The notes under the pieces are model-generated. The model did not search any database, was not told the DNA's origin, and worked only from the letters and a program-made list of their open reading frames with translations. A DNA stretch of 64,000 bases from Penicillus capitatus (lineage: Eukaryota > Plantae > Chlorophyta), in assembly GCA_965649825.1 (NCBI GenBank), contig OZ287714.1, forward strand, positions 124,001-188,000, given 5' to 3'. Shown in pieces: positions 3,001-64,000 of this stretch. The position numbers were made by a program, and so were the translations under genes. The first letter of the stretch is position 1; every line of letters begins with the position of its first letter.

Positions 3001-4670
3001 GATTCCCCGATCTCCGCGTCCTGCAACGCTTGTTGTCCGTTGGCAGATTCCATCAGCCAGCTCAGCGCCAGACGAAGCCAGTCTCCTTCTTCGTCCTCGT
3101 GGCTCAGAAGAAGATCGACAAGCACGCGGACATCATCGATCCCTGGACGTTTCGTCCATCTCTTGATCATGTCCAGAGAACAGGAATTCTGGAGGGGCAC
3201 GCAGAAGTGCCCTCCGTTCTCCCGGGCCAGCTGCAACAGGCACGGAAAGACGCTGAACTGATCGTCCGCATAGTGGCAGTAACGGGAAAGGGACTCGAGC
3301 GTCGAGGACAGCTTCTCTGCATCTTTTTTCAGATGTGCCAAATCCGGATCGCGATGCAGGAAAAGGAACAAACTCCCCAGAGAATGAAACATGTCCGCAT
3401 CAAGACTCGCGACCGGTGGGAGTGCGACGTCGTCCGCAAAGAAAAAACGCAAGAGCGAAAGGCGTTCAAAGCGCCACTCCTTCTCTTTCTTGGTCTGAGG
3501 CTGAAACTGAGTGACGGATCTGAGACAGGCGTCTATGACATCTTGTGGAATCGAGTGACCGATGTTTCTGAGACAAAAAGACACAAATCCTGAGAAGCGC
3601 GCAATGGTAAGCACAGGGAGATCTCCAAAACGAAAAGATGATTGAAAAAGGTAGACAAGGATATCGAGCACCAGAGCGTCGTTCCTTTTCTCGGTGCTAC
3701 GAAGAGTGGAGCACAAGGCGTCAAACATCACGACGCCATCCGAGAAGAAGATAACGTCCAGGATTTTGCTGCGCAGTTGAGATTTGGCAAAGGCAGAAGA
3801 CGGATCGTAAACGTCCGAGAGACTTGAGATCAACCCGGCCACGTCGCGGAGAGACGTCAGCGACTTCAGTGCATCAACGATCAACGCGTCGGGCCTCTTT
3901 CTTGGACCAATCGTGCAACGACGGCCACGATCGTATCTTCCATCGCTCCACGTCAACTCCGTCGTTTCCTCTACAGAGATCTGCAGACACTGATCGGAGG
4001 GGATTCGCCCCTGTGAGATGGTCTTCACAACCAAAGGGCTGACAAAAAGCGTGAGAAGTTCAGGAGAACAGGCGATGTGTTGCAAGGCTCTTTGCTCCGC
4101 GTCCTGTCCCCGAGAGTCACTCGACGAGCCCGGCTGCGGCAAGTGCGTTCGCATTTCGCGCAGGGCCATTTCGACGAGACCCACGATGGCGTCGACCTCC
4201 TGTCCCGTGGACTGGGGAATGGACAGGAGTTCCAGCAGGATGCCCAGATCTGGCTGCTCGTTATGCTTTCTTTGTTCTTTTTTCCACTTTCCCACCGTCA
4301 CATCACCGACAGAGAGCTTCGATGCATTGTACTTTCGAGAAAACAGAAGGACGTCCCAGAAATCGCGTTGCGTTTCGGTATCCGTGCGACGGACGAACCA
4401 TTCAAGTACACGTGCCAAGGGTCCACACATGGCTCCCTTCTGTTCGAAAACGCGAACGGAGTAGGCGTAGACGATGCACCGCATGAGGGCTTTGGACCCG
4501 AGTTCCGTCAGCTCCTCGCTTCCAGCCTCGATGGAGCCATTGTCGATGAAGGACCTGACGGATTTGCGGGCGTCTTTGAGCGATTCCTGTTCCAAACGTC
4601 CGTCGACGGACGACTTGAGTGCGTTTTGGAGAAGGTCGAGTTCCAGCCATTTACTCGCCGGGCGCGACAT
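1..4670 (-). CDS. Giant midasin/Rea1-like multi-AAA+ ATPase, left copy (5' part; 3' end outside window)
   Basis: ATG at 4670 (MSRPASKWLELDLLQNALK). Mirrors 56662..61331 with no net indel. Contains AAA module 1 (GASGVGKT, WVLLDEMNLA) and module 2 (GCAGSGKT). No stop-terminated ORF in this frame appears in the track, implying it is open to the edge. Confidence 0.9.
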   Translation of the reverse strand, partial: MSRPASKWLELDLLQNALKSSVDGRLEQESLKDARKSVRSFIDNGSIEAGSEELTELGSKALMRCIVYAYSVRVFEQKGAMCGPLARVLEWFVRRTDTETQRDFWDVLLFSRKYNASKLSVGDVTVGKWKKEQRKHNEQPDLGILLELLSIPQSTGQEVDAIVGLVEMALREMRTHLPQPGSSSDSRGQDAEQRALQHIACSPELLTLFVSPLVVKTISQGRIPSDQCLQISVEETTELTWSDGRYDRGRRCTIGPRKRPDALIVDALKSLTSLRDVAGLISSLSDVYDPSSAFAKSQLRSKILDVIFFSDGVVMFDALCSTLRSTEKRNDALVLDILVYLFQSSFRFGDLPVLTIARFSGFVSFCLRNIGHSIPQDVIDACLRSVTQFQPQTKKEKEWRFERLSLLRFFFADDVALPPVASLDADMFHSLGSLFLFLHRDPDLAHLKKDAEKLSSTLESLSRYCHYADDQFSVFPCLLQLARENGGHFCVPLQNSCSLDMIKRWTKRPGIDDVRVLVDLLLSHEDEEGDWLRLALSWLMESANGQQALQDAEIGESTWAEVRDRFLKLMSDVGGQSIDTVLCLTRLVYLLLNLYPEIVEPALTLVARGIVHFEMPDDEFDPLMRAITADLRRSDAVMRKLLSAAFDASFSDGSISDTAFFDMLVAFVERQPTEDKRAICRVIRQLVHRVFDLMEKDESDIQTEDLKKLVHLAIEERTDSGTEAEEEADSSQDTHMRPFLSATFPEGKTVQVDTASLDGMKKMVAVFGRRQLNLASASLRKEILSPSEMEGATEGSDDRSSERSASLIPTETTEENIRMIEEIVEHDRPVLLYGASGVGKTATLRELADRRGVELVRLNMSSNLSPEDFLAKISFDPVGQIVLDVQPFARSFEKGDWVLLDEMNLAEESALKVVVDALESGEIVLCDQSSALTPPRILKKHPNFRLFATQNPWQAGKRERMSHAFFSQFSVVHFKELPKQEWDHIVQSTLYRHFEGAETDLIRAVAGKMTGFHCDVREAIQSRCCETGSHTVVTNRELLMWTAMISTAEQLPKTDEELGDYAWLIYGSRFREDGQQLVRDVLSESGLSASQQNAPSGTPLSSFERMVQAYGALTSEGRQGCGFEAGAFWKRHFPGKALPDDSVKTVERCMSIHGDVSRAVLDPDFMRRHGVYSSFSEFWLAQWIADALQTGCFRSDSPEELGRLGAEIYCSAFRTDEARTVILDIFAAKWNVDRASVPFRGSVVPEMPVALNDQTCALLTALVNALRSEQPILIEGCAGSGKTCLAKTIAFLLRNRYEQVTLTAESEPSVMLGEHLPKENSREDIAIEWRDGPLTRSFKDGSACIVDNIGQAEAVLQERVNPVLESPKILCLSEKGETKNLRCRVLADGTVSKVPGPAAGFQFIATHTPKGVASRGYDSSSNELTAALANRFLTVHVDDPARLPDSKFCSVLHSMLRCSLCDEHCRQHAEGICDYCLRIRSFLHRQGGRCSFRHFVTFLDIATNLMVRYPQTDARDCLHCALMAAFVFRAKDRQQSSDLLDHMGCRSDVLSRLQLR

Positions 4671-5540
4671 GGCAGATCTTACTGCTCACAGACAGAGAAA
4701 CCTTGTTAGATCTGGTGTGCGTTCGACAGAGAGGGCGTCACGTGAATGACGTCTTCGACAAAGCGGTTCGCCTTCGCACGCTCCGTTGACAAGGATGTTT
4801 GTTCGTGCGGGCTGACGGCTGTTCGTTCAACTAGAGAACGACTGGGGTTGGAAACGGTGATGTTGCTTAGGCGTTTATAACGACAATATATTAACGTTCG
4901 CAAAGACAGTTTCACCAGTGAAAGTTCGTCGTTTACACCGTCCCGAATGCACCAACGCGCCGTACGACTATGCCTTGGTTTTGGTTAGCTGCCCGAAGCT
5001 GAGCGTGACGTGACGTGGATGTTGAATGGCCTCGAGAGAAGACAACGTTATCTTCGGAAGAATGGAAGAGGGCTTCTCCTTAAGACGGTAAGGAAACGCC
5101 GTTCAAGTCGATATCGAACAGTGTCGCATTCAAGAGGCAGCACCAGCGCGACTGACTCAGCTGCTTGATGCCTTCTGATGGGAATGATTCTATCAGACAA
5201 GACGTCGTCATGTCTGAGAGATGTCACACTTGTTGAGGATAACGAACACTCTGCATGAAAGAGAACCTGTGTTCTCTGTTTGGACGCTTGCAGCGGCTCA
5301 TGTTTTACAACTGTGCTCAGGTTCATGCTTAATGTCCAAACCACATTCGACGTCAGACAACGGCAACGGTCCGGATGCGTATCTTTCCTGCGATCCATCC
5401 ACGCTGCTCGATGGTCCAATGCTACATTCGAGGCAGATCACATCGCTTCTGTTCAGGGCAATGGGGGACATCCCCTTCCATGAAGCGGCAGTGTCCATGA
5501 GAACCGTCAAATCGATCCATCCTGTCATCTTCGCTCTGCA
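4671..5540. promoter_or_regulatory. Bidirectional promoter region between the AAA gene and eIF3m (left arm)
   Basis: 870 bp between divergent ATGs. Short blocks are conserved with the right arm (GTTGCTTAGGCGTTTATAACGACAA, TTAACGTTCGCAAAGAC, CCAGTGAAAGTTCGTCGTTTA) amid substitutions and indels. Confidence 0.6.
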
Positions 5541-7172
5541 ATGAACAACTGTCTCTTCGAAGTTTCGGAGGAAGACTCGTTCTCTCTCGTCTTCAAGTAC
5601 ATCGCAGAGATTCTCGACGGCGGACAGGTGTCTCACCGCTCACTCGTCCAAGTCGAGATCTGACTGAGTCCGTAGACCGTCGATGCCGAGTCGAATTCGG
5701 CGGGAGGCCGCTTTCTCGCGTCCTTCTATCGTCTCGTCGAGAAAGACGCCGAGGCAGAAGAGGTACAGGTGCCCGAGGCGTCCATCCCCCAAATCCTGAC
5801 CCTGTTCGTCGAACAACTGCCCCTCCTCGTCGAGAAGGGCAGCGATGCCGACATCGAGAGTTGCATTCAGATCATCAACCATCATCTGCTGACGAAACTC
5901 GGCCCGGAAGATTCGAGCAGATTTGCTGTCTCCTTGGCCTCGGCCATCTCAGCGAATGTCACATCCGCATTGCTCCTAGCTCCTGCCCCATTCCCATCTG
6001 CATGCAGCACGAGACGAAGACGGAGACGCGGTTGGCGTGTTTGCTGCATCTGTACAATGCCTGCGCCCGCAACGACGATCAGTACAACGTCCTGATGAAG
6101 ACGATCGACTTTGCCATCTCCGCACGCGTGGCAGAGATCCTTGCGCCGATTGTCAAAGGTGGCAGTGCGCAACCTCGCTGTCGAACGGCCTCCGTCAGTC
6201 GTGTGCGGCAGATCACGCCGATGCTCTCGTGGAGAACTGGAAGCTCTCTCATGCGGCGGCCTCCAAGTTGTATCTGGGCATCGCTGTTTTGGTCCGTCAG
6301 AGCAAAGGTGCCTCGATCTGCCCACTCACTCAGGCTCATGTGCCGTTGGTCCCAATGCAGGAGACAAGGAGACACACATGCAGTCACTGGCATTGACGTC
6401 CAAAGCGCTCGCTTCTGTGGACGTGTGACCGACCCCTGGCGACTGCGTGGACCAATACACGCTGTGCATCTAGGCATCGGACAGTTCGGCCTGCAAGGAA
6501 ATGGCCGGCGAAGCTGCTGCCGCGGTCGCCGATTTCCTCAAATCGCCGAAGACCTTTTCGTGCGATCTTCTCGAACTGGCGCCCGTCAAGGCGCTGTCGA
6601 AGAATCCAACGCATCTCTACCTCCATCAGCTCTTCAGTGCCGTTGCCAGAGGACAGATTAATCAGGTCTCGCTCTTTTCGTTGTCCACATGTCCACTACA
6701 GATACGACTGACTGTGCCACAGCTGGAGACGGTCTGTCGGCCAGATCTGCTTCAAAGCCTCGGCATCACTCGCGAGGACTGCCTCGAAAAGACGCGGATG
6801 AGTGCTCTGCTCGGTTTGGCTAGAGCGACTGGCAACAAGCCCATTCTCTATGACCAAGTGGCGTCCGCTCTGCAAACAGAGAGGGAAGAGGTCGAGCAAT
6901 GGATCGTCAAGGCGACAGGTGCAAAACTCTTGTCGGCGCGCATCGATCAGATCCAGGAAGTCATCGTCGTTACCTCCTGCATCAGCAAAGGATTCGACGG
7001 TGCGTGTCAACCGTCATCCACCAAAGCCTCACAGTCTACATTCGACTCAGGGAGCGACTGGAAGAGACTAAAAGAGCAATTGACATCTTGGCACTCCATG
7101 TTGAAGGACATACAGCAGAAGATACACGAAGGCATGAATGCGGATGTCACTTCTTCTCTTCTGCATGTCTAA
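5541..7172 (+). CDS. EIF3M: Translation initiation factor eIF3 subunit M (PCI domain), spliced, left copy
   Basis: MNNCLFEVSEEDSFSLVFKYI | TVDAESN...; ETRLACLLHLYNA; FSCDLLELAPVKAL; EKTRMSALLGLA; EVEQWIVKATGAKLLSARIDQ PCI end; WKRLKEQLTSW. First intron 5628..5675. Ends NADVTSSLLHV*. Confidence 0.9.
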
Positions 7173-40695: not shown

Positions 40696-40750
40696 GGTCT
40701 GAAGAGGAACGCTCCGGACGAAAGCGGCGGCGTCATGTCAACATGATGAT

Positions 40751-43748: not shown

Positions 43749-43882
43749 TCTGAATGGTGCTCACCGTCCCTTTGCAAACACCATCTCATTCTTTCGCTCC
43801 TCTGTCTTTCGTTTCATCATTGGACTCGTACCAACGCTTGTGAAGTAAACGTGTCGTACGTGTGTTACATCGGTCGATTGCT

Positions 43883-45846: not shown

Positions 45847-46337
45847 AGTGTGTCAGTAGATACACCTACAGAAGTGAAAGCCACTGTGCAAGCATACGCG
45901 AGTTCTCCCGCAGAAAAATTGCGCTGTTCCGCTTGCTATCCGTGCTGGTTTTGTTTCCCAGCTTGGTGGTGCCGCCGAAGATGTCGTTAGTAAGCAAATA
46001 ATAAAAGAATAAAAAGAGAAACGAGCCACGCGTTTTTGTGGTTTAAATTTTTACTCCAGTGATTTACAATTGTGATACTGCCCCAAGAAAACAAACAATC
46101 TTGTACCAAGACCCTATCTAATCGTGACCCCTGTCTACCCTCTTCATACCTCTCGAGTCGAGTAACTTGACGATCGAACATAGAAACAATAACGTGATAA
46201 ACTGACGGGGGTCGTTGTTACGAGTCCTTCAAGGAGTGCAGCAGGAAGAACAGACAGGCCGACACGTCCTCCGGCAACACCACCAGCAGTCGATCCATTG
46301 TTACATACAGAAAATCATCGCATCGCTTTCATCGACG

Positions 46338-47410: not shown

Positions 47411-47463
47411 TTGATTGAAGAGCTTAAATAGCCTCGTATGAAGGAAAAGGAGAGTGGATGTGT

Positions 47464-54181: not shown

Positions 54182-55784
54182 TCCGCATTCATGCCTTCGT
54201 GCATCTTCTGTTGCATGTCCTTCAACATGGAGTGCCAAGATGTCAATTGCTCTTTTAGTCTCTTCCAGTCGCTCCCTGAGTCGAATGTAGACTGTGAGGC
54301 TTTGGTGGATGACGGTTGACACGCACCGTCGAATCCTTTGCTGATGCAGGAGGTAACGACGATGACTTCCTGGATCTGATCGATGCGCGCCGACAAGAGT
54401 TTTGCACCTGTCGCCTTGACGATCCATTGCTCGACCTCTTCCCTCTCTGTTTGCAGAGCGGACGCCACTTGGTCATAGAGAATGGGCTTGTTGCCAGTCG
54501 CTCTAGCCAAACCGAGCAGAGCACTCATCCGCGTCTTTTCGAGGCAGTCCTCGCGAGTGATGCCGAGGCTTTGAAGCAGATCTGGCCGACAGACTGTCTC
54601 CAGCTGTGACACAGTCAGTCATATCTGTAGTGGACATGTGGACAACGAAAAGAGCGAGACCTGATTAATCTGTCCTCTGGCAACGGCACTGAAGAGCTGA
54701 TGGAGGTAGAGATGCGTTGGATTCTTCGACAGCGCCTTGACGGGCGCCAGTTCGAGAAGATCGCACGAAAAGGTCTTCGGCGATTTGAGGAAATCGGCGA
54801 CCGCGGCAGCAGCTTCGCCGGCCATTTCCTTGCAGGCCGAACTGTCCGATGCCTAGATGCACAGCGTGTATTGGTCCACGCAGTCGCAGGGGTCGGTCAC
54901 ACGTCCACAGAAGCGAGCGCTTTGGACGTCAATGCCAGTGACTGCATGTGTGTCTCCTTGTCTCCTGCATTGGGACCAACGGCACAGGAGCCTGAGTGAG
55001 TGGGCAGATCGAGGCACCTTTGCTCTGACGAACCAAAACAGCGATGCCCAGATACAACTTGGAGGCCGCCGCATGAGAGAGCTTCTAGTTCTCCACGAGA
55101 GCATCGGCGTGATCTGCCGCACACGACTGACGGAGGCCGTTCGACAGCGAGGTTGCGCACTGCCACCTTTCACAATCGGCGCAAGGATCTCTGCCACGCG
55201 TGCGGAGATGGCAAAGTCGATCGTCTTCATCAGGACGTTGTACTGATCGTCGTTGTGGGCGCAGGCATTGTACAGATGCAGCAAACACGCCAACCGCGTC
55301 TCCGTCTTCGTCTCGTGCTGCATGCAGATGGGAATGGGGCAGGAGCTAGGAGCAATGCGGATGTGACATTCGCTGAGATGGCCGAGGCCAAGGAGACAGC
55401 AAATCTGCTCGAATCTTCCGGGCCGAGTTTCGTCAGCAGATGATGGTTGATGATCTGAATGCAACTCTCGATGTCGGCATCGCTGCCCTTCTCGACGAGG
55501 AGGGGCAGTTGTTCGACGAACAGGGTCAGGATTTTGGGGATGGACGCCTCAGGCACCTGGACCTCGTCTCCCTCGGCGTCTTTCTCGACGAGACGATAGA
55601 AGGACGCGAGAAAGCGGCCTCCCGCCGAATTCGACTCGGCATCGACGGTCTACGGACTCAGTCAGATCTCGACTTAGACGAGTGTTCGGTGAGACACCTG
55701 TCCGCCGTCGAGAATCTCTGCGATGTACTTGAAGACGAGAGAGAACGAGTCTTCCTCCGAAACTTCGAAGAGACAGTTGTTCAT
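54142..55784 (-). CDS. EIF3M: eIF3m, second copy with a different C-terminal tail
   Basis: Mirror of 5541..7144; the single 1-bp indel falls in an intron. Ends NAEWIWVDGSTSSTA* using sequence from beyond the repeat junction. Confidence 0.85.
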
Positions 55785-58700
55785 TGCAGAGCGAAGATGA
55801 CAGGATGGATCGATTTGACGGTTCTCATGGACACTGCCGCTTCATGGAAGGGGATGTCCCCCATTGCTCCGAACAGAAGCGATGTGATCTGCCTCGAATG
55901 TAGCATTGGACCATCGAGCAGCGTGGATGGATCGCAGGAAAGATACGCATCCGGACCGTTGCCGTTGTCTGACGTCGAATGCGGTTTGGACATGAAGCAT
56001 GAATCTCGACATAATCGTAAAACACGAGCAGCTGCAAGCGTCCAAACAGAGAATACAGGTTCTCTTTCATGCAGAGTGTTCGTTATCCTCAACAAGTGTG
56101 ACATCTCTCAGACATGACGACGTCTGGTCTGATAGAATCATCCCCATCAGAAAGCATCAAGCTGCTGAGTCGGTCGCGCTGGTGCTGGTGTTGCATCCTA
56201 ATCGCGCAACGCCATTCGAAATCGTCTTGAAGGGCGTTTCTTTGCCGCTTGAAGGAGAAGCCCTCTTCCATTCTTTGGACGATAACGTTGCCTTGGCTTG
56301 AGGCCATTGAGCAGTCACGTCACGCTCAACTTCGGGCAGCTGACCAAGGCGTGGTCGAGCGGCGCGTTAGTACGTTCGGGTCGGTATAAACGACGAACTT
56401 TCACTGGTAAAAAACAGTCTTTGCGAACGTTAAGCCTTTGTCGTTATAAACGCCTAAGCAACACCACCGTTCTCCTGGTGAACGAGCAACCGCCTGCGTC
56501 CACGAACGAACAGTCACCAGCCCGCACGAACAAACATCCTTGTCAACGGAGCGTGCGAAGGCGAACCGCTTTGTCGAAGACGTCATTCACGTGACGCCCT
56601 CTCTGTCGAACGCACACCAGATCTAACAAGGTTTCTCTGTCTGTGAGCAGTAAGATCTGCCATGTCGCGCCCGGCGAGTAAATGGCTGGAACTCGACCTT
56701 CTCCAAAACGCACTCAAGTCGTCCGTCGACGGACGTTTGGAACAGGAATCGCTCAAAGACGCCCGCAAATCCGTCAGGTCCTTCATCGACAATGGCTCCA
56801 TCGAGGCTGGAAGCGAGGAGCTGACGGAACTCGGGTCCAAAGCCCTCATGCGGTGCATCGTCTACGCCTACTCCGTTCGCGTTTTCGAACAGAAGGGAGC
56901 CATGTGTGGACCCTTGGCACGTGTACTTGAATGGTTCGTCCGTCGCACGGATACCGAAACGCAACGCGATTTCTGGGACGTCCTTCTGTTTTCTCGAAAG
57001 TACAATGCATCGAAGCTCTCTGTCGGTGATGTGACGGTGGGAAAGTGGAAAAAAGAACAAAGAAAGCATAACGAGCAGCCAGATCTGGGCATCCTGCTGG
57101 AACTCCTGTCCATTCCCCAGTCCACGGGACAGGAGGTCGACGCCATCGTGGGTCTCGTCGAAATGGCCCTGCGCGAAATGCGAACGCACTTGCCGCAGCC
57201 GGGCTCGCCGAGTGACTCTCGGGGACAGGACGCGGAGCAAAGAGCCTTGCAACACATCGCCTGTTCTCCTGAACTTCTCACGCTTTTTGTCAGCCCTTTG
57301 GTTGTGAAGACCATCTCACAGGGGCGAATCCCCTCCGATCAGTGTCTGCAGATCTCTGTAGAGGAAACGACGGAGTTGACGTGGAGCGATGGAAGATACG
57401 ATCGTGGCCGTCGTTGCACGATTGGTCCAAGAAAGAGGCCCGACGCGTTGATCGTTGATGCACTGATATCGCTGACGTCTCTCCGCGACGTGGCCGAGTT
57501 GATCTCAAGTCTCTCGGACGTTTACGATCCGTCTTCTGCCTTTGCCAAATCTCAACTGCGCAGCAAAATCCTGGACGTTATCTTCTTCTCGGATGGCGTC
57601 GTGATGTTTGACGCCTTGTGCTCCACTCTTCGTAGCACCGAGAAAAGGAACGACGCTCTGGTGCTCGACATCCTTGTCTACCTTTTTCAATCATCTTTTC
57701 GTTTTGGAGATCTCCCTGTGCTTACCATTGCGCGCTTCTCAGGATTTGTGTCTTTTTGTCTCAGAACCATCGGTCACTCGATTCCACAAGATGTCATAGA
57801 CGCCTGTCTCAGATCCGTCACTCAGTTTCAGCCTCAGACCAAGAAAGAGAAGGAGTGGCGCTTTGAACGCCTTTCGCTCTTGCGTTTTTTCTTTGCGGAC
57901 GACGTCGCACTCCCACCGGTCGCGAGTCTTGATGCGGACATGTTTCATTCTCTGGGGAGTTTGTTCCTTTTCCAGCATCGCGATCCGGATTTGGCACATC
58001 TGAAAAAAGATGCAGAGAAGCTGTCCTCGACGCTCGAGTCCCTTTCCCGTTACTGCCACTATGCGGACGATCAGTTCAGCGTCTTTCCGTGCCTGTTGCA
58101 GCTGGCCCGAGAGAACGGAGGGCACTTCTGCGTGCCCCTCCAGAATTCCTGTTCTCTGGACATGATCAAGAGATGGACGAAACGTCCAGGGATCGATGAT
58201 GTCCGCGTGCTTGTCGATCTTCTTCTGAGCCACGAGGACGAAGAAGGAGACTGGCTTCGTCTGGCACTGAACTGGCTGATGGAATCTGCCAACGGACAAC
58301 AGGCGTTGCAGGACGCGGAGATCGGGGAATCGACATGGGCAGAGGTGCGCGATCGCTTCCTTAAGCTGATGAGCGACGTCGGAGGGCAGAGCATCGACAC
58401 GGTTCTCTGTTTGACGCGTCTGGTGTACCTTCTGCTGAACCTGCATCCCGAGATCGTCGAGCCAGCCCTGACGCTTGTTGCTCGTGGCATCGTTCATTTC
58501 GAAATGCCCGATGACGAATTCGATCTGTTAATGGGGGCCATGACGGCCGACCTGCGTCGATCGGATGCTGTCATGAGGAAGCTGCTGTCTGCCGCCTTCG
58601 ATGCGTCCTTTTCCGACGGGTCAATCTCTGACACCGCCTTCTTCGACATGCTGGTCGCATTCGTGGAGAGACAGCCTAAGGAAGACAAAAGAGCTATCTG

Positions 58701-61331
58701 TCGTGTCATCCGTCAACTGGTGCACAGAGTCTTCGATCTCATGGAGAAAGATGAGAGCGACATCCAGACGGAAGGTTTGAAGAAACTGGTGCATCTTGCC
58801 ATCGAAGAGAGAACGGATAGCGGAACGGAAGCAGAAGAAGAGGCCGACTCCTCGCAGGATACACACATGCGTCCGTTCCTCTCGGCCACCTTCCCGGAAG
58901 GCAAGACTGTCCAGGTCGACACGGCGTCGTTGGACGGTATGAAGAAAATGGTTGCCGTGTTCGGTCGTCGTCAGCTAAACCTGGCGAGTGCGTCACTGAG
59001 AAAAGAGATCCTATCGCCTTCGGAGATGGAAGGCGCAACGGAGGGCTCTGACGATCGCTCCAGCGAGAGATCCGCATCTCTGATCCCAACAGAGACGACA
59101 GAAGAGAACATTCGGATGATCGAAGAGATCGTGGAGCACGATCGCTCTGTTCTGCTCTACGGAGCATCTGGAGTGGGGAAGACGGCCACTCTGAGGGAGC
59201 TGGCGGACCGAAGGGGCGTCGAATTGGTCCGTCTCAACATGTCCTCGAATCTCTCTCCGGAGGACTTTCTGGCGAAGATATCATTCGATCCCGTCGGGCA
59301 GATCGTGCTCGATGTGCAGCCCTTCGCCAGGAGCTTCGAGAAAGGCGACTGGGTCCTGCTCGATGAGATGAACCTGGCGGAGGAGAGTGCCCTCAAGGTG
59401 GTCGTCGATGCATTGGAGAGTGGCGAGATCGTGCTTTGCGACCAGAGCTCTGCACTGACGCCTCCTCGCATTCTGAAGAAGCATCCAAACTTCAGGCTGT
59501 TTGCCACCCAGAATCCGTGGCAGGCTGGAAAGAGAGAGCGAATGAGCCACGCCTTCTTCTCTCAGTTCTCCGTCGTGCACTTCAAGGAGCTGCCGAAGCA
59601 AGAGTGGGATCACATCGTACAGTCGACACTGCACCGCCACTTCGAAGGCGCAGAGACGGATCTCATTCGCGCCGTGGCAGGAAAGATGACCGGTTTCCAT
59701 TGCGACGTCAGAGAAGCCATCCAGAGCAGGTGCTGCGAGACGGGAAGCCACACCGTCGTCACGAACCGGGAGCTGTTGATGTGGACAGCAATGATATCAA
59801 CCGCCGAACAGCTGCCCAAGACGGACGAAGAGCTCGGCGACTATGCATGGCTGATCTACGGCAGCCGGTTCAGGGAGGACGGCCAGCAGCTGGTTCGAGA
59901 CGTCCTGAGCGAGAGTGGCCTGTCTGCCAGCCAGCAGAACGCCCCGTCGGGCACACCCCTTTCCAGTTTCGAAAGAATGGTGCAGGCATACGGCGCTCTG
60001 ACATCGGAAGGCAGACAGGGATGCGGATTCGAAGCGGGGGCCTTTTGGAAAAGACACTTCCCTGCAAAAGCATTGCCGGACGACAGCGTCAAGACGGTCG
60101 AGCGATGCTTGTCCATCCACGGAGATGTCTCGCGAGCCGTGCTCGATCCAGACTTCATGCGACGTCACGGAGTGTACAGTTCGTTCTCCGAGTTCTGGTT
60201 GGCGCAGTGGATCGCGGATGCCCTGCAGACAGGGTGCTTCAGGAGCGACAATCCAGAGGAGTTAGGCCGACTTGGCGCCGAGATCTACTGCCCCGCTTTC
60301 AGGACGGACGAAGCCCGGACGGTCATCCTGGACATCTTTGCGGCGAAGTGGAACGTCGATCGAGCCTCCGTGCCTTTCCGCAGCTCTGTCGTGCCGGAGA
60401 TGCCCGTGGCGCTCAATGATCAGTCATGTGCGTTGCTGACGGCGCTGGTCAATGCGCTGCGGAGCGAGCAGCCCATTCTGATCGAGGGATGTGCTGGATC
60501 GGGCAAGACCTGTTTGGCGAAGACGATCGCCTTCCTCCTGAGAAACCGCTACGAGCAAGTCACGCTCACCGCGGAGAGCGAACCCTCCGTCATGCTCGGA
60601 GAACACCTGCCCAAGGAGAACAGCCGTGAAGACATCGCCATAGAGTGGAGGGACGGTCCGCTGACGAGATCCTTCAAAGATGGCAGCGCCTGCATCGTGG
60701 ACAACATCGGTCAAGCAGAGGCAGTGTTGCAGGAGCGCGTCAACCCCGTACTGGAGTCGCCGAAGATCCTCTGCCTGTCGGAGAAGGGGGAGACGAAGAA
60801 TCTGCGTTGCCGCGTCCTGGCAGATGGGACGGTGTCCAAGGTGCCGGGGCCTGCGGCAGGATTCCAGTTCATCGCAACGCACACTCCGAAGGGCGTTGCT
60901 TCGAGAGGATACGACAGCTCGTCGAACGAACTGACTGCCGCCCTGGCCAACCGATTCCTCACAGTGCATGTGGACGATCCCGCACGGCTGCCAGACAGAG
61001 AGTTCTGCTCCGTCCTGCACTCCATGCTGCGATGCTCCCTGTGCGACGAGCATTGTCGACAGCATGCCGAAGGCATCTGCGATTACTGTCTAAGAATCCG
61101 AAGCTTTCTGCACAGGCAGGGAGGAAGGTGCAGCTTCAGACATTTCGTCACATTCCTGGACATCGCGACAAACCTGATGGTCCGGTATCCGCAGACAGAT
61201 GCAAGGGACTGCCTGCATTGTGCACTGATGGCAGCATTTGTCTTCCGCGCCAAGGACCGACAGCAAAGCAGTGACCTGCTGGATCACATGGGCTGCCGTT
61301 CGGACGTTCTGAGCAGACTGCAACTGCGTGA
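54182..61331. repeat. Right arm of the inverted duplication (outer limit not visible because the left arm leaves the window)
   Basis: Reverse complement of 1..7144. Confidence 0.98.
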
Positions 61332-64000
61332 GAGCGTCGAGGTGGATCCGGAACTGGTGCTGACTCGATCGAGAGAAGCATACGCCGATGCCGTTCTGCT
61401 CGGCGTCTGCACGAACAAACCCGTTCTCCTCGAAGGAAAGCCTGCAGTGGGAAAGACTGCTCTGATCAGAGGACTGAGAAAGTTCCGTGGACGCAGCAAC
61501 CCTGTCACTGTTCTGAGCAACAGCGACACCACCACGCTGCAGGACTACTTCGGGACATGGCTGCCCGACAAGGCCGGATTTCATTACTCCAAAGGCGTCC
61601 TCGTTCAAGCCATGGAGAACGGAGACTGGTTCGTGGCAGATGAGTTCAATCTCGCACCCCTCTCCGTAGCCGCAGCACTGATGCCGTTCCTGGAGGGCTC
61701 TCGGGTGGTTCAGATTCCGGGCACCGGCATGACGATCAACGTCCATCCAGAATTCAGATTCTTCGCCACGCAAAATCCATTCCACGGAGGTGGAGACGGA
61801 AGAAAACTCCTGCCAATCACGGTGCAGAACCGTTTCCTGGAGGTGGGTGTGGGCGACTTTCCGGAAGAAGAATTCGCCGACATCATCTACAGGAGATTCC
61901 AGAGGGAAGAGTACAGGGACATCGTGAGCATGGCAGACGCAGAGCGTCTGTCCAGTCTGTACTTTGCGTCCTCCGGGATCTTCCGTCTAACCATGAGAGA
62001 CCTGATCAAGGTGGTTCGCCGTTTCAAGCTTCTCCGAGCAGAGAACGCAGGAGGAACAACATCTTGGGCCGCTGTCGTCATGTCACTGCTCAATCCACTG
62101 GTCTCCACAGAGGACGAAGGACAGCAGCTCCTGTCGCTCATCAGACAGGCATTCGGCGAAGAAGCAGAGATAATCGCAAGATCCTGCAAGGAGAAGCACA
62201 TCCAGGAGACGAGTCACGGGCTCTCGTTTTTCCAGGGACCTCTCTGCGTTTCCTTCAGTGGATATCGACTGGATCGAAGCCGTCTGTGGAAACACGGCAG
62301 TGCTGCGAAGCTCCCTCCCAAGATCTTTCAAGATAAGCTCGTCGAGTTGGCATTCACGATGAAGGCGAGGGAACCAGTGCTCCTGTACGGAGAGACTTCG
62401 TTCAAGACAGAACTGATCAGGACGTGGCTGGAGATCTCTGAGATGATGGACAGGGCACAGATGGTACACTTGACGTCCGATTCCGAAGCGACGGAGCTGA
62501 TCGGCCAAGTGCGTCTAGCATCCACAGTGGAAGTCCTTGAGATGTTGCTGTCCATCGGCAACTTCATTCTCCGAGAGATCGAGGCAGAGCTCATCGTGAG
62601 TGACAAGTCCGAAAACCGACAACTCGACATTCGACGGATTGACTGCGCGAGCGATCTTCCCAGAAGAATCAGTGTACTCAACGAACTCTTCAAGGGAAGA
62701 CTAGGAATTCCAGACGATCGGCTCTCGGCTGCCTCTGTCAGAGATACACAGTCTGCACCCTCTGACACGGATGAGAAAATGGAGGATTCGCCGGCCGCCG
62801 AGTACCAGGGATCCGGTGATGGTTCAAGCAGCGGTACGGAATGGGGAGGATCTGATGAAGAAGGAGGCCCCGTTCAGAGGGAACAGGAATCGATGGACGA
62901 GAACAAGGAGGATTCGCCGGCCGCCGAGGACCAGGGATCCGGTGATGGTTCAAGCAGCGGCACGGAATGGGGAGAAGCTAACGATGAAGACAGAGGCCAG
63001 GTTCAGAGAGAAGAGGAATCGAGGGATGCTGCTGGCAGTTTCTCTGGCGACCGGCACCCAGATGCAGATGCAGAAGTCGAGATCAGCGAAGCAAGGGAAC
63101 GCGCCGAAGAGCCCGAATACAGAGCATTTAACTCAGTCCTCGAAACGGTCAGGGAGATCGTTGATTTGCTCAACGAGGTCTTCGATCAGCACCCACCGGT
63201 TGCCCTGGAACGAGCAGTCCAACGAATGAACCAGTTGTGTGCGTTTATGTCGGATGCCAGTCGGGCTAAGAGCCATGGATGCTTTGTCTTCCGTGATGGT
63301 CCGTTTGTCAATGCCATCACGCTGAAGCACATATGCGTCCTTGAAGACTACGATCGATGTCCACAGTCTGTGACAGAACGACTGAACAGTGCACTCGAAC
63401 TGGATCCGACATTCTCCATTCCTGAGGACACATCTCTCAGCGGAATCGGTGCTGCGACGCTGGATATTCCAGAGACGGGTTACGCGTTCGTAACAACGGC
63501 AAATTTGGAGTCCGCTGCCAAGAAACCGAGACTCTCGGAGGCCACCAAGAGTAGGATCACGCGAATCCACATCCCGGCGTACTCCAGTGAGGATATCATG
63601 TCGATTGTCGATGCGAAGCTCTTCTGCGAGACGAAAGATGATTATCCGAATGAAGCTTCTCAACTGATGGATGCCATCCGAGCCATTCAGTCTGCATCTG
63701 TGGAAGAAACACACGAGAATCCATGCGCCGATTTTCGAAGAACTCTCAGATGGGCCAACTTTGTCATACACCATCCGAGGGAGACCATGACTTTCGAGAG
63801 AATCGTCCTGCTGGGAGCCAGATACTTCTATCTCCTCGGCCTGACGCCAGAACAGCAAAAGAACATCCTGTTGAGTCATTTCGGCGATGAAGTTCGCGCC
63901 TTGGACAAGGCACTCGACGAAGTCAAGGCCACGGAAGGGAACAGCGCCTCCTCCTTTGGCATCACGATCGAAGATCGAATAGGTAGAGGCGATCGATTGG
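56662..64000 (+). CDS. Giant intron-free midasin/Rea1-like multi-AAA+ ATPase, right copy (>=2446 aa, open at window end)
   Basis: Translated codon by codon with no stop. Walker A motifs at 59161 (GASGVGKT), 60487 (GCAGSGKT), 61435 (GKPAVGKT), 62389 (GETSFKT). Walker B: LLDE, IVDN, VADE, VLED. MoxR-clade HPNFRLFATQNP and NRF motifs. Confidence 0.93.
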   Translation, partial: MSRPASKWLELDLLQNALKSSVDGRLEQESLKDARKSVRSFIDNGSIEAGSEELTELGSKALMRCIVYAYSVRVFEQKGAMCGPLARVLEWFVRRTDTETQRDFWDVLLFSRKYNASKLSVGDVTVGKWKKEQRKHNEQPDLGILLELLSIPQSTGQEVDAIVGLVEMALREMRTHLPQPGSPSDSRGQDAEQRALQHIACSPELLTLFVSPLVVKTISQGRIPSDQCLQISVEETTELTWSDGRYDRGRRCTIGPRKRPDALIVDALISLTSLRDVAELISSLSDVYDPSSAFAKSQLRSKILDVIFFSDGVVMFDALCSTLRSTEKRNDALVLDILVYLFQSSFRFGDLPVLTIARFSGFVSFCLRTIGHSIPQDVIDACLRSVTQFQPQTKKEKEWRFERLSLLRFFFADDVALPPVASLDADMFHSLGSLFLFQHRDPDLAHLKKDAEKLSSTLESLSRYCHYADDQFSVFPCLLQLARENGGHFCVPLQNSCSLDMIKRWTKRPGIDDVRVLVDLLLSHEDEEGDWLRLALNWLMESANGQQALQDAEIGESTWAEVRDRFLKLMSDVGGQSIDTVLCLTRLVYLLLNLHPEIVEPALTLVARGIVHFEMPDDEFDLLMGAMTADLRRSDAVMRKLLSAAFDASFSDGSISDTAFFDMLVAFVERQPKEDKRAICRVIRQLVHRVFDLMEKDESDIQTEGLKKLVHLAIEERTDSGTEAEEEADSSQDTHMRPFLSATFPEGKTVQVDTASLDGMKKMVAVFGRRQLNLASASLRKEILSPSEMEGATEGSDDRSSERSASLIPTETTEENIRMIEEIVEHDRSVLLYGASGVGKTATLRELADRRGVELVRLNMSSNLSPEDFLAKISFDPVGQIVLDVQPFARSFEKGDWVLLDEMNLAEESALKVVVDALESGEIVLCDQSSALTPPRILKKHPNFRLFATQNPWQAGKRERMSHAFFSQFSVVHFKELPKQEWDHIVQSTLHRHFEGAETDLIRAVAGKMTGFHCDVREAIQSRCCETGSHTVVTNRELLMWTAMISTAEQLPKTDEELGDYAWLIYGSRFREDGQQLVRDVLSESGLSASQQNAPSGTPLSSFERMVQAYGALTSEGRQGCGFEAGAFWKRHFPAKALPDDSVKTVERCLSIHGDVSRAVLDPDFMRRHGVYSSFSEFWLAQWIADALQTGCFRSDNPEELGRLGAEIYCPAFRTDEARTVILDIFAAKWNVDRASVPFRSSVVPEMPVALNDQSCALLTALVNALRSEQPILIEGCAGSGKTCLAKTIAFLLRNRYEQVTLTAESEPSVMLGEHLPKENSREDIAIEWRDGPLTRSFKDGSACIVDNIGQAEAVLQERVNPVLESPKILCLSEKGETKNLRCRVLADGTVSKVPGPAAGFQFIATHTPKGVASRGYDSSSNELTAALANRFLTVHVDDPARLPDREFCSVLHSMLRCSLCDEHCRQHAEGICDYCLRIRSFLHRQGGRCSFRHFVTFLDIATNLMVRYPQTDARDCLHCALMAAFVFRAKDRQQSSDLLDHMGCRSDVLSRLQLRESVEVDPELVLTRSREAYADAVLLGVCTNKPVLLEGKPAVGKTALIRGLRKFRGRSNPVTVLSNSDTTTLQDYFGTWLPDKAGFHYSKGVLVQAMENGDWFVADEFNLAPLSVAAALMPFLEGSRVVQIPGTGMTINVHPEFRFFATQNPFHGGGDGRKLLPITVQNRFLEVGVGDFPEEEFADIIYRRFQREEYRDIVSMADAERLSSLYFASSGIFRLTMRDLIKVVRRFKLLRAENAGGTTSWAAVVMSLLNPLVSTEDEGQQLLSLIRQAFGEEAEIIARSCKEKHIQETSHGLSFFQGPLCVSFSGYRLDRSRLWKHGSAAKLPPKIFQDKLVELAFTMKAREPVLLYGETSFKTELIRTWLEISEMMDRAQMVHLTSDSEATELIGQVRLASTVEVLEMLLSIGNFILREIEAELIVSDKSENRQLDIRRIDCASDLPRRISVLNELFKGRLGIPDDRLSAASVRDTQSAPSDTDEKMEDSPAAEYQGSGDGSSSGTEWGGSDEEGGPVQREQESMDENKEDSPAAEDQGSGDGSSSGTEWGEANDEDRGQVQREEESRDAAGSFSGDRHPDADAEVEISEARERAEEPEYRAFNSVLETVREIVDLLNEVFDQHPPVALERAVQRMNQLCAFMSDASRAKSHGCFVFRDGPFVNAITLKHICVLEDYDRCPQSVTERLNSALELDPTFSIPEDTSLSGIGAATLDIPETGYAFVTTANLESAAKKPRLSEATKSRITRIHIPAYSSEDIMSIVDAKLFCETKDDYPNEASQLMDAIRAIQSASVEETHENPCADFRRTLRWANFVIHHPRETMTFERIVLLGARYFYLLGLTPEQQKNILLSHFGDEVRALDKALDEVKATEGNSASSFGITIEDRIGRGDRL
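62782..63033 (+). repeat. Two-copy 126-bp (42-aa) acidic tandem repeat inside the AAA ORF
   Basis: GAGGATTCGCCGGCCGCCGAG starts at 62782 and 62908; unit EDSPAAE(Y/D)QGSGDGSSSGTEWG...VQRE(Q/E)ES. Confidence 0.95.

What the first reader, a model, noticed from the sequence alone, without database searches (positions are those of the whole stretch)
56662..64000. Giant intron-free midasin-like AAA+ machine that does not look like the housekeeping ribosome factor
Seen: a single stop-free ORF of >=2446 codons in a genome whose housekeeping genes carry an intron every few hundred bp. It has ~830 aa of helical-looking N-terminal sequence, then four tandem MoxR-clade AAA modules in midasin-like order. 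Known: Rea1/MDN1 is a conserved, normally single-copy 60S biogenesis factor with a much shorter N-terminal domain. Inference: strong divergence, the long N-extension, absence of introns and duplication point to a repurposed paralog. It could be a dynein/RNF213-style sensor or remodeller with a C-terminal effector, i.e. a candidate algal defence or conflict system. The C-terminus is outside the window, so the function cannot be judged here.
Basis: partly seen in the sequence, partly recalled or inferred. Interest (0 to 1): 0.85.

Follow-up and report, generated by a model that had tools for sequence, protein, structure and literature searches.

The report
Giant midasin-sister AAA+ gene, duplicated
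The window holds two inverted, near-identical copies of the first 7-kb exon of a roughly 8,200-residue green-algal protein from an uncharacterised sister family of the ribosome-assembly motor midasin, a family with its own pattern of ATP-hydrolysing sites and, in its closest relatives, three metal-dependent binding heads at the far end.

Summary
Window 56662-64000 (+) is one stop-free frame of 2446 codons: an 830-residue alpha-solenoid followed by four AAA_5 modules that align one-to-one with midasin AAA1-AAA4. A second copy lies inverted at 4670-3 (-). The repeat arms are 1-7144 and 54182-61331, 97.7% identical, and both are cut by the window edges.

It is not canonical MDN1. In a 1.84-billion-protein search it belongs to a separate family of proteins up to 7,954 residues, found in Bryopsis, bdelloid rotifers, a thraustochytrid, a chrysophyte and unnamed eukaryotes. 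An NJ tree separates this family from canonical midasins in 50 of 50 bootstraps.

Four features define the family:
- Walker B is intact in AAA1, 3 and 5 and degenerate in AAA2, 4 and 6. Midasin has AAA2-5 intact.
- There is no AAA2 insert.
- AAA4 carries a 200-400-residue insert.
- The N-terminal region is about 800 residues.

Relatives at 43-70% identity continue across one to four short introns (measured 35-118 nt) to about 8,100-8,500 residues. They carry a long non-midasin linker, an ASH/HYDIN-type Ig domain and three or four VWA domains; three of them, in the one relative read residue by residue, have MIDAS motifs. No D/E-rich tail was found.

"Intron-free" is true only of the exon in view. 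The defence idea has no support. The function is unknown. A midasin-style ATP-driven extractor is the best inference.

The parts
56662..64000 (+). Copy B: first giant exon (codons 1-2446) of the midasin-sister gene, cut by the window end about 50-55 codons before the conserved intron site
   Evidence: Stop-free translation; upstream in-frame stop at 56644; 65-69% BLASTP (66-70% codon-alignment) and 42-43% identity over 99-100% of its length to P0001-P0004; alignment with relatives up to GPPGIGK
56662..59151 (+). N-terminal extension, residues 1-830: HEAT/ARM-like alpha-solenoid with a small beta insert (about residues 213-254) and a disordered connector (about 717-810)
   Evidence: No Pfam hit; AlphaFold2 pLDDT 71.5, pTM 0.63; Foldseek PDB hits are generic solenoids (karyopherins, UNC-45, Utp10/20) with TM <= 0.36, and no midasin entry appears among the 50 matches listed
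59074..60396 (+). AAA1 (about residues 805-1245): Walker A GASGVGKT, Walker B WVLLDE (intact)
   Evidence: canonical midasins have ED at this position
60397..61341 (+). AAA2 (about residues 1246-1560): Walker A GCAGSGKT, Walker B CIVDN (no catalytic Glu). Walker A to Walker B spacing is 65 residues, so there is no AAA2 H2 insert
61342..62301 (+). AAA3 (about residues 1561-1880): Walker A GKPAVGKT, Walker B FVADE (intact); the best-conserved module against midasin
62302..64000 (+). AAA4 (about residues 1881-2446+): Walker A GETSFKT (the same odd GxxxxKT as midasin AAA4), Walker B CVLED (swapped, degenerate), with a 313-residue gap between the two motifs
62524..63249 (+). AAA4 insert: two helical hairpins (about residues 1955-2010 and 2151-2196) around a disordered acidic Ser/Gly/Asp/Glu loop of about 135 residues
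   Evidence: AlphaFold2: helices at pLDDT 72-91, loop below 35, whole model poor at pLDDT 46; alignment A2
62769..63026 (+). Two tandem units of about 128 nt (87% identical) inside the acidic loop. They add about 42 residues that P0001-P0003 lack
   Evidence: Self-blastn; alignment A2; not reported by TRF
3..4670 (-). Copy A: codons 1-1556 of a second copy, cut by the window start and intact as far as it is visible
   Evidence: tblastn 98.6% identity with no stop; 43 substitutions and 0 indels in 4670 nt; dN/dS 0.34
1..7144 (.). Left arm of the inverted duplication (copy A plus 2.47 kb of shared upstream sequence, 4671-7144)
   Evidence: blastn 97.7% over 7166 columns
54182..61331 (.). Right arm of the inverted duplication. 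The shared upstream sequence 54182-56661 is 3.75% diverged with 8 indels; the coding part is 0.92% diverged with no indel

Best explanation
The window carries two divergently oriented copies, 47 kb apart, of the 5' giant exon of a green-algal gene. The gene encodes a protein of about 8,200 residues from an uncharacterised sister family of midasin.

Shown:
- Six AAA_5 modules correspond one-to-one to midasin AAA1-6. Four are in the window; AAA5 and AAA6 are seen in relatives.
- A family-wide pattern leaves only AAA1, AAA3 and AAA5 with a canonical Walker B (DE). AAA2 (DN), AAA4 (ED) and AAA6 (DN) cannot hydrolyse by the standard mechanism. All six keep the Walker A lysine.
- The midasin AAA2 regulatory insert is absent.
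- AAA4 carries a large helical and acidic insert.
- The N-terminal region is an alpha-solenoid of about 800 residues.
- In relatives, a linker of roughly 4,000 residues follows the ring, then an ASH/HYDIN-type Ig domain, then three or four VWA domains. In the one relative read residue by residue, three of them carry DxSxS-type MIDAS motifs, and these are conserved in a rotifer homologue.

Inferred, by analogy with Rea1 and MoxR-VWA pairs:
- The solenoid and ring dock on a large assembly.
- The MIDAS heads at the end of the long linker capture acidic side chains of one or several ligands.
- ATP turnover at alternating sites remodels the linker and pulls the ligands off.
- The substrate is not the pre-60S particle and remains unknown.

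The two copies are a recent inverted segmental duplication (dS 0.019) whose coding sequence is under purifying selection.
For: Family membership:
- A phmmer search of 1.84 billion representatives gives two tiers. The first holds colinear hits covering most or all of the 1200-residue query, at 30-72% identity and about 400-2036 bits, in proteins up to 7,954 residues whose AAA1 starts at about 650-940. The second holds canonical midasins of about 4,700-5,500 residues, at 335-380 bits broken into 8-10 stretches.
- Named members are Bryopsis GMH34713.1, bdelloid rotifer proteins, Hondaea GBG29381.1 and Epipyxis.
- In a MAFFT alignment of 16 family members (the relative rel2, the window and 14 tier-1 hits) and 14 canonical sequences, the modules align 1:1. 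The Walker B pattern DE/DN/DE/ED/DE/DN holds in nearly all family members, against ED/DE/DE/DE/DE/DN in nearly all canonical ones, with scattered single-module exceptions.
- Walker A to Walker B spacing in AAA2 is 58-73 residues in the family and 145-187 in midasins. In AAA4 it is 269-464 against 58-145. The distance from the N-terminus to AAA1 is about 690-970 in full-length family members against about 230-390 in full-length canonical ones.
- The NJ split between the two groups has 50/50 bootstrap support.
- For comparison, in Rea1 the AAA2-5 sites are active and AAA1/6 lack Walker B, and the AAA2 H2-alpha insert is regulatory (PMC6286127).

Gene continuation and C-terminus in relatives.

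Selection on the copies: coding divergence is 0.92% with 0 indels, against 3.75% and 8 indels upstream. Substitutions split 22.5 nonsynonymous to 20.5 synonymous.

N-terminal solenoid.
Against: - The C-terminus, linker, AAA5 and AAA6 of the window's own copies lie outside the window. They are inferred from relatives at 43-70% identity.
- Copy A could be a truncated 5' duplicate. The second copy in a relative is one: it has stops and ends at about codon 1495.
- No expression, localisation or biochemical data exist for any family member.
- The mechanism rests on analogy.
- A swapped ED motif might retain some activity.
- The linker shows no sequence similarity to the Rea1 linker, so the force-transmission analogy is untested.
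Confidence: 0.72

Rival explanations
1. It is the alga's only, highly derived MDN1 orthologue and still works in 60S ribosome biogenesis.
For: The six modules are colinear with midasin. VWA/MIDAS domains sit at the C-terminus in relatives. UniRef automatically names some family members 'Midasin'. A separate canonical MDN1 in this genome could not be looked for.
Against: The family separates from canonical midasins 50/50 and differs in catalytic-site pattern, inserts, N-terminal region, linker and number of heads. It occurs in bdelloid rotifers, which are animals; by established knowledge animals keep a canonical MDN1. It is multi-copy with divergent paralogues and a pseudogenised copy, which is unusual for an essential single-copy factor. 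No D/E-rich tail is present.
Confidence: 0.05
2. It is an immune or conflict sensor-effector: a RNF213- or NLR-like surveillance ATPase of a giant coenocytic cell.
For: Copy number has expanded in this lineage, with recent duplication and a decayed copy. The taxonomic distribution is patchy and includes bdelloids, which (from general knowledge) carry many horizontally acquired genes. The N-terminal region and linker evolve fast while the ring is conserved. Prokaryotic vWA-MoxR systems have been proposed as conflict systems (general knowledge).
Against: No nuclease, ligase, protease, TIR or death-type effector domain was found in about 8,400 residues of a relative. PADLOC gives only P-loop-level matches. 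No close relative was found in IMG/VR (one single-protein scan). dN/dS is 0.13-0.26 between relatives and 0.34 between the two window copies; the former is similar to the neighbouring S10 peptidase and LRR genes at 0.17-0.20.
Confidence: 0.13
3. It is a cytoskeletal, ciliary or centrosomal remodelling factor, recruited through its ASH/HYDIN-type Ig domain.
For: One or two ASH/HYDIN/Cep192-type Ig domains precede the VWA heads in three or four relatives (direct Pfam scans on two, faint precomputed hits on two more). By general knowledge the taxa that hold the family all make cilia or flagella at some stage.
Against: The Ig hits are weak (E 6e-7 to 5e-5) and lie near the Pfam cut-off: one above it (30.0 bits against 25.5) and one below it (23.8). 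Most ciliated eukaryotes appear to lack the family, and the distribution does not track cilia. Nothing else in the protein points to cilia.
Confidence: 0.08
4. The duplication is an assembly artefact (a mis-joined haplotype), or both copies are decaying pseudogenes.
For: Divergence of 2.3% between the arms is in the range of allelic variation. Both arms run off the window, so neither copy can be shown to be complete. A relative carries a truncated pseudogene copy.
Against: The arms are separated by 47 kb of unique, gene-bearing sequence that is syntenic with a related assembly. A comparable inverted duplicate about 70 kb away exists in that independent assembly. Both copies are stop-free and indel-free, with coding divergence four times lower than upstream divergence.
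Confidence: 0.04

Closest known systems
Midasin (MDN1/Rea1), the 60S ribosome biogenesis AAA+ ATPase
   Same: Single chain with six AAA_5 modules that align module by module, including the peculiar AAA4 Walker A GxxxxKT and the degenerate AAA6 Walker B (DN). Helical N-terminal domain, long helical linker, and C-terminal VWA/MIDAS domain(s). Best PDB hits at E 1e-83.
   Different: - About 8,200 residues against about 4,900-5,500.
- N-terminal region about 840 residues against about 300.
- Walker B intact in AAA1/3/5 rather than AAA2-5.
- No AAA2 H2-alpha insert.
- An insert of 270-460 residues in AAA4.
- No detectable similarity to the midasin linker or MIDAS domain.
- No D/E-rich region.
- An ASH-type Ig domain.
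- Three or four VWA heads instead of one.
- Multi-copy.

Unnamed database proteins of the same family: Bryopsis sp. KO-2023 GMH34713.1 (hypothetical, 6098 aa), Hondaea fermentalgiana GBG29381.1 (labelled 'Dynein heavy chain, cytoplasmic' / 'Midasin'), and bdelloid rotifer proteins (Rotaria CAF3709476.1, Adineta CAF1156114.1, Didymodactylos CAF0986919.1)
   Same: A colinear match across all or most of AAA1-AAA4 (30-36% identity, about 490-790 bits). The same Walker B pattern (two modules deviate in the Bryopsis model) and the same insert pattern. A similar N-terminal length in the full-length models. The C-terminal 840 residues with three MIDAS motifs are 30% identical between an algal relative and Rotaria (E 1e-97).
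   Different: The N-terminal region and linker have diverged beyond BLAST recognition outside the Ostreobium-like clade. None is characterised. Many of the gene models are partial.
Prokaryotic MoxR-VWA chaperone pairs and animal VWA8
   Same: An AAA_5/MoxR-clade ATPase working with a MIDAS-containing VWA partner. In one eukaryotic family member, a large multi-VWA protein is encoded by a separate adjacent gene.
   Different: Those are single-module hexamers or proteins of 2-3 modules and fewer than 2,000 residues. Here six modules are fused in one chain with a linker of several thousand residues.
RNF213 and dynein heavy chains
   Same: Giant single-chain six-AAA rings with long N-terminal helical arms and only a subset of active sites.
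   Different: Apart from sub-threshold matches to the dynein P-loop models (Pfam AAA_7, AAA_6), there is no sequence relationship beyond the AAA+ fold. There is no RING/RZ E3 module, no stalk or microtubule-binding domain, and no RNF213 or dynein family hit above its threshold.

Membership tests
Canonical midasin (MDN1/Rea1) | Six tandem AAA_5 modules colinear with Rea1 AAA1-6 | tested here: met
   AAA1-4 in the window and AAA5-6 in relatives align 1:1 with 14 canonical midasins. PDB midasin E 1e-83 / 9e-84.
Canonical midasin (MDN1/Rea1) | Walker B intact in AAA2-AAA5, absent in AAA1 and AAA6 (PMC6286127) | tested here: not met
   Window: AAA1 DE, AAA2 DN, AAA3 DE, AAA4 ED. Relatives: AAA5 DE, AAA6 DN. 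Nearly all 14 canonical sequences show ED/DE/DE/DE/DE/DN.
Canonical midasin (MDN1/Rea1) | AAA2 H2-alpha insert of about 100 residues between Walker A and Walker B | tested here: not met
   Spacing is 65 residues in the window, against 145-187 in canonical midasins.
Canonical midasin (MDN1/Rea1) | Short N-terminal domain of about 300 residues | tested here: not met
   840 residues precede the AAA1 lysine, against about 230-390 in full-length canonical sequences. No midasin entry appears among the 50 Foldseek PDB matches listed.
Canonical midasin (MDN1/Rea1) | Groups with canonical midasins in a phylogeny | tested here: not met
   NJ tree on 1791 columns: family | canonical split in 50/50 bootstraps; identity 25% between groups against 36% and 46% within. 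An NJ tree only, no maximum-likelihood tree.
Canonical midasin (MDN1/Rea1) | Rea1-type linker, D/E-rich region and a single C-terminal MIDAS domain | not testable with these tools
   These parts lie outside the window. In a 66%-identical relative there is no BLAST similarity to a canonical linker or MIDAS domain, no 100-residue window with at least 30% D/E, and three VWA/MIDAS domains.
Canonical midasin (MDN1/Rea1) | Single-copy essential gene; the only MDN1 of the genome | not testable with these tools
   The genome is not available. The family is multi-copy in related assemblies. The presence of a separate canonical MDN1 was not checked.
Midasin-sister giant family (unnamed; Bryopsis GMH34713.1, Hondaea GBG29381.1, bdelloid proteins) | Colinear high-scoring match over most or all of AAA1-AAA4 (a single long best stretch, about 400 bits or more) | tested here: met
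   about 400-2036 bits with the best stretch spanning all or much of query 1-1200, against canonical midasins at 380 bits or less in 8-10 stretches.
Midasin-sister giant family (unnamed; Bryopsis GMH34713.1, Hondaea GBG29381.1, bdelloid proteins) | Alternating Walker B pattern DE/DN/DE/ED/DE/DN | tested here: met
   Met for AAA1-4 in the window. AAA5-6 lie outside the window but fit the pattern in nearly all 15 other family members aligned, with scattered single-module exceptions.
Midasin-sister giant family (unnamed; Bryopsis GMH34713.1, Hondaea GBG29381.1, bdelloid proteins) | No AAA2 insert, a large AAA4 insert, and an N-terminal region of about 700-970 residues | tested here: met
   Window values are 65, 313 and 840 residues. 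Family ranges are 58-73, 269-464 and 687-971.
Midasin-sister giant family (unnamed; Bryopsis GMH34713.1, Hondaea GBG29381.1, bdelloid proteins) | ASH-type Ig domain plus three or four C-terminal VWA/MIDAS domains | not testable with these tools
   These parts lie outside the window. They are present in relatives P0002/rel2 and P0133 (Pfam scans run here), in the partners of P0003 and P0004 (faint precomputed hits), and in Rotaria P0286 (MIDAS motifs in the C-terminal alignment).
RNF213-type or defence AAA+ systems | E3 (RING/RZ) or another effector module; homology to known defence-system proteins | tested here: not met
   No such Pfam domain in the window protein or in about 5,900 further residues of a relative. 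PADLOC gives only P-loop-level hits at E 2e-7 or weaker.

The most novel reading that the evidence does not exclude
The gene represents a previously unrecognised lineage of single-chain six-AAA ring mechanoenzymes, sister to midasin, alongside dynein and RNF213. The ring has alternating catalytic sites (AAA1/3/5), an AAA4 insert in place of the AAA2 insert, and a multivalent tail of three or four MIDAS heads. It acts on a non-ribosomal substrate. The lineage is patchily retained or laterally spread among eukaryotes: Bryopsidales-like green algae, bdelloid rotifers, thraustochytrids and chrysophytes. In siphonous algae it has expanded into a multigene family of intron-poor genes of about 25 kb.
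Probability: 0.45. Interest if true: 0.75.

Novelty: new variant of a known kind. Interest (0 to 1): 0.62.

Why it matters
Midasin is treated as a single, universally conserved ribosome-assembly motor. A clearly separate sister family would give a natural experiment on how six-module AAA+ rings convert ATP turnover into pulling force. It keeps the same six-module ring but has rewired active sites, relocated regulatory inserts and several MIDAS heads. It would also point to an unknown large cellular substrate.

The result also flags a database problem: members of this family are currently auto-labelled 'Midasin', 'Dynein heavy chain' or 'MoxR-like ATPase'.

For algal genomics there are two oddities worth explaining. 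These are genes of about 25 kb that are almost free of introns, in genomes whose ordinary genes (judged here from STT3) carry introns every few hundred bases. And they are recurrently duplicated in inverted orientation.

Tried and rejected
- Extending the window's own copies. The window's genome is not in the look-up collection: an exact look-up of the S10 peptidase ORF found nothing, and no 100% hits came from protein searches. The C-terminus therefore had to be taken from relatives.
- A protein search with 3322 residues of the downstream ORF timed out. The shorter retry found only P0008. ORFs such as the 5717-residue one were not returned by that search.
- Viral origin. A single-protein scan of IMG/VR, which reaches close relatives only, found no relative. 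The neighbouring genes are ordinary intron-bearing algal genes. GC3 is only modestly higher, 0.66-0.69 against 0.52-0.60.
- Defence-system homology. The PADLOC result was negative at anything beyond the P-loop level.
- Prokaryotic origin of the uninterrupted ORFs of 4,496, 7,751 and 7,954 residues in metagenomes. Their contexts are eukaryotic: transposons, sparse ORFs, a cathepsin propeptide and a TLD domain.
- P0001 as the orthologue of the window gene. dS is 0.87, against 0.35-0.46 for syntenic neighbours in the same assembly, and the gene is not syntenic. It is probably a paralogue.
- The AlphaFold2 model of AAA4 was too poor (pLDDT 46) for a fold search. Only the helical-hairpin and disordered-loop description of the insert was kept.
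- Rfam, tRNA and TRF scans of the window returned nothing.
- Literature searches for a described midasin paralogue found none. Garbarino and Gibbons 2002 is not held in the library.
Full report
OBSERVATION

Window 56662-64000 (+) translates without a stop for 2446 codons. An in-frame TGA lies 18 nt upstream of the ATG, and the start M..KWLELD..LQ.AL is shared by all relatives.

Pfam finds four AAA_5 stretches and a midasin-type lid, AAA_lid_7. The best solved-structure matches are midasins from S. pombe and S. cerevisiae, E 1e-83 to 1e-75, followed far behind by NorQ, CbbQ and CobS.

Residues 1-830 have no Pfam hit. AlphaFold2 models them as an alpha-solenoid with a small beta insert (pLDDT 71.5, pTM 0.63). 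Foldseek returns only generic HEAT/ARM solenoids (karyopherins, UNC-45, Utp10/20; TM <= 0.36), and no midasin entry appears among the 50 matches listed.

Window 1-7144 is the reverse complement of 54182-61331 at 97.7% identity. Copy A (4670-3, minus strand) is intact for all 1556 codons that fit in the window and is 98.6% identical in protein. The copies point outward from a 47-kb unique centre, and both arms are cut by the window edges.

ORGANISM AND SURROUNDINGS

The centre encodes ordinary eukaryotic genes:
- protein kinase
- PP2C
- COPI alpha
- a myosin with IQ motifs (its syntenic counterpart in a related assembly also carries a DIL domain)
- STT3
- LRR proteins
- an S10 carboxypeptidase
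- a NASP-like TPR protein
- a LINE-type endonuclease/reverse transcriptase at 50216-51895

The closest named STT3 is Ostreobium quekettii at 69%. Land plants follow at 63% or less, and unnamed metagenome proteins reach 80-99%. The source is therefore a green alga nearest to the siphonous, coral-boring Ostreobium lineage, but not O. quekettii itself.

STT3 in the window has at least five introns of about 45-60 nt in 2.7 kb. A 7.3-kb exon is therefore exceptional for this genome.

An assembly from sample ERZ26696514 (contigs at about 170-180x coverage) carries the syntenic block from the S10 peptidase to the myosin at 86-88% nt identity.

THE GENE IS MUCH LARGER THAN THE WINDOW SHOWS AND IS NOT INTRON-FREE

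The word-indexed protein search found four ORFs of 2466-2492 residues at 42-69% identity over the whole query. All four are ORF calls that end just after an AAA5 Walker A, 'GPPGIGK'.

In locus L001 a 55-nt GT..AG phase-0 intron restores GPPGIGK|TAVVIEVAG and joins a further 5717-codon ORF. Other relatives show:
- 2466 + 2476 + 1574 + 1813 + about 95 residues
- 2492 + 5685 residues
- 2485 + 2323 + 3308 residues
- 5842 + 2353 + 154 + 151 residues, with no intron at the AAA5 site

The gene therefore encodes about 8,100-8,500 residues with one to four short introns. Those measured are 35, 49, 55 and 118 nt.

The window ends about 50-55 codons before the conserved intron position.

WHAT LIES DOWNSTREAM IN RELATIVES

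The parts that follow the window's exon are AAA5 and AAA6, then a linker of roughly 4,000 residues, then an Ig-like domain, then VWA domains.
- AAA5 and AAA6 are colinear with Rea1 residues 1711-2240 (E 9e-84).
- The linker has no Pfam hit and no detectable BLAST similarity to a canonical midasin linker.
- One or two ASH/HYDIN/Cep192-type Ig-like domains follow (E 6e-7 and 5e-5).
- Three or four VWA domains close the protein.

In the fully read relative, three VWA domains carry MIDAS motifs:
- WCLLVDNSGSM ... GT ... DG
- LLLDISVSM ... DG
- CLDCTGSM ... AD

These motifs are conserved in a Rotaria protein that matches this 840-residue region at 30% identity, E 1e-97.

No 100-residue window in that relative reaches 30% Asp+Glu, so there is no midasin-type D/E tail. 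The only acidic low-complexity stretch sits inside AAA4.

A DISTINCT FAMILY, NOT CANONICAL MIDASIN

A full phmmer scan of 1.84 billion cluster representatives with window residues 801-2000 gives two tiers.
- Tier 1: colinear hits covering most or all of the query, at 30-72% identity and about 400-2036 bits, in proteins up to 7,954 residues whose AAA1 begins at about 650-940.
- Tier 2: several hundred canonical midasins of about 4,700-5,500 residues, at 335-380 bits broken into 8-10 stretches.

Named tier-1 members:
- Bryopsis sp. KO-2023 GMH34713.1
- proteins of the bdelloid rotifers Rotaria, Adineta and Didymodactylos
- Hondaea fermentalgiana GBG29381.1, labelled 'Dynein heavy chain' / 'Midasin'
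- a protein of the chrysophyte Epipyxis
- metagenome proteins labelled 'MoxR-like ATPase'

The contexts of three unnamed members are eukaryotic.

I aligned the ring region of 16 family members (the relative rel2, the window and 14 tier-1 hits) and 14 canonical midasins. The six modules align one-to-one, including the odd AAA4 Walker A GxxxxKT. The two groups differ consistently, with only scattered single-module exceptions:

| Feature | Family | Canonical midasin |
|---|---|---|
| Walker B, AAA1 to AAA6 | DE / DN / DE / ED / DE / DN | ED / DE / DE / DE / DE / DN |
| Walker A to B spacing, AAA2 | 58-73 residues | 145-187 residues |
| Walker A to B spacing, AAA4 | 269-464 residues | 58-145 residues |
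| N-terminus to AAA1 lysine (full-length sequences) | about 690-970 residues | about 230-390 residues |
| Mean identity within group | 36% | 46% |

The canonical Walker B pattern matches the published statement that Rea1 AAA2-5 are active and AAA1/6 lack Walker B (PMC6286127). The AAA2 spacing shows that the family lacks the AAA2 H2-alpha regulatory insert. Mean identity between the groups is 25%. An NJ tree on 1791 columns recovers the split in 50 of 50 bootstraps.

The window protein has all family states for AAA1-4:
- AAA1: GASGVGKT / LLDE
- AAA2: GCAGSGKT / IVDN
- AAA3: GKPAVGKT / VADE
- AAA4: GETSFKT / VLED

Its AAA4 insert is predicted as two helical hairpins around a disordered acidic loop of about 135 residues. 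Only the hairpins are confident; the model as a whole is poor. In the window copy a tandem duplication of about 128 nt (62769-63026) lengthens that loop.

COPY NUMBER AND SELECTION

Between the two window copies:
- The shared upstream 2.5 kb differs by 3.75% and has 8 indels.
- The 4.67 kb of coding sequence differs by 0.92% and has no indel.
- dS is 0.019 and dN/dS is 0.34. The split is 22.5 nonsynonymous to 20.5 synonymous changes, where neutrality predicts about 3:1.

Purifying selection or gene conversion has therefore acted on the coding part since a recent duplication.

Against relatives, dN/dS is 0.13-0.26. The neighbouring S10 and LRR genes give similar values, 0.17-0.20.

dS to P0001 is 0.87, roughly twice the 0.35-0.46 of syntenic neighbours from the same assembly, and P0001 is not syntenic. 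P0001 is thus probably a paralogue of the window gene.

P0001's contig also holds a second copy on the opposite strand about 70 kb away. It comprises 7.4 kb of upstream flank plus the first 1,495 codons or so, at 94-95% identity, with stops. It is a truncated pseudogene.

One metagenome (ERZ25074695) holds three divergent genes on contigs of 34x, 38x and 42x coverage, plus a fourth at 20x. The similar coverage of the first three suggests, but does not prove, that they come from one genome. Taken together the family looks multi-copy in these algae, and inverted 5' duplications recur.

MECHANISM (INFERENCE)

By homology of the ring and by the MoxR-VWA logic, the protein is most likely an ATP-driven extractor or remodeller.
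- All six sites can probably bind nucleotide, because the Walker A lysines are kept.
- Only AAA1, 3 and 5 have a catalytic Walker B. This suggests a trimer-of-dimers-like cycle, unlike the AAA2-5 block in Rea1.
- The solenoid and ring would dock on a large assembly.
- The MIDAS heads on the long linker would grip acidic residues of one or more ligands.
- The AAA4 insert may take the regulatory role that the AAA2 insert plays in Rea1.

The substrate is unknown.

ALTERNATIVES

- A conflict or immune role is compatible with the expansion, the decayed copies, the patchy distribution and the fast-evolving N-terminal region and linker. It has no positive support: no effector domain, no defence-system homology and no close viral relative.
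- A ciliary or centrosomal link rests only on the weak ASH hits.
- The 'sole derived MDN1' reading is contradicted by the family-level differences and by the family's presence in animals. It could not be excluded directly, because the genome was not searchable.

NOVELTY

No paper in the held library describes a midasin paralogue of this kind. Database members are hypothetical or mislabelled. The window's gene is a new, duplicated member of an uncharacterised family, and that family is itself a new variant of the midasin kind.

The defining sequence features were tested. The C-terminal architecture of the window's own copies was not, and no functional data exist for any member.

Noticed in passing
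window 50216-51895 (+), perhaps continuing to about 53200: A LINE-type non-LTR retrotransposon ORF (AP-endonuclease plus reverse transcriptase, Pfam E 4e-15 and 7e-13). It lies about 1-2 kb inside the inner boundary of the right repeat arm (54182). It may be related to how the duplication arose.
   Followed up: partly
window 29288-48957; L004 and L005 (ERZ26696514 ctg303836_180x and ctg303070_174x): The block S10 peptidase / aldo-keto reductase / LRR / STT3 / LRR / myosin-DIL is syntenic at 86-88% nt identity with two nearly identical contigs of a metagenome assembly. Gene dS is 0.35-0.46. The window therefore comes from a sister species or lineage of an abundant alga in that sample.
   Followed up: partly
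window 38022-40680 (-); L001 17453-17507; rel2 (L002/L003): Introns in this algal lineage are very short: about 45-60 nt in STT3, and 55, 49 and 35 nt in the giant gene of relatives.
   Followed up: partly
L002/L003 merged (rel2) positions about 24690-24846 and about 29550: In relative P0002 the frame changes twice. One change is at an insertion of about 190 nt without clear GT..AG ends. The other is a frameshift near the end of the third ORF. These could be non-canonical introns, assembly errors, or early decay of that paralogue.
   Followed up: no
L011 (JGI 3300071650, Ga0620617_000037) 10001-23491 and 29009-33491: In one eukaryotic family member the AAA protein stops at 4496 residues. A separate convergent gene 5.5 kb away encodes a protein of at least 1702 residues with several VWA domains. 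This may be a split version of the same machine.
   Followed up: no
L009 31720-34209; L010 33660-38806: Downstream of the uninterrupted 7751- and 7954-codon ORFs of two unnamed eukaryotes lie further ORFs with VWA domains. Those genes are probably longer than 8,500 codons.
   Followed up: no
window 7635-8513 (+) and 17252-18109 (+); 15951-17318 (+): PP2C phosphatase fragments at two places and a protein kinase. The ORF next to the left-arm boundary has only a weak PP2C hit (E 4.5e-4).
   Followed up: no
window 56662-63999 against neighbouring exons: GC3 of the giant gene (0.66-0.69, up to 0.74 in codons 1001-1500) is higher than in neighbouring genes (0.52-0.60) and similar to the LINE ORF (0.66). 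The cause is unknown.
   Followed up: no
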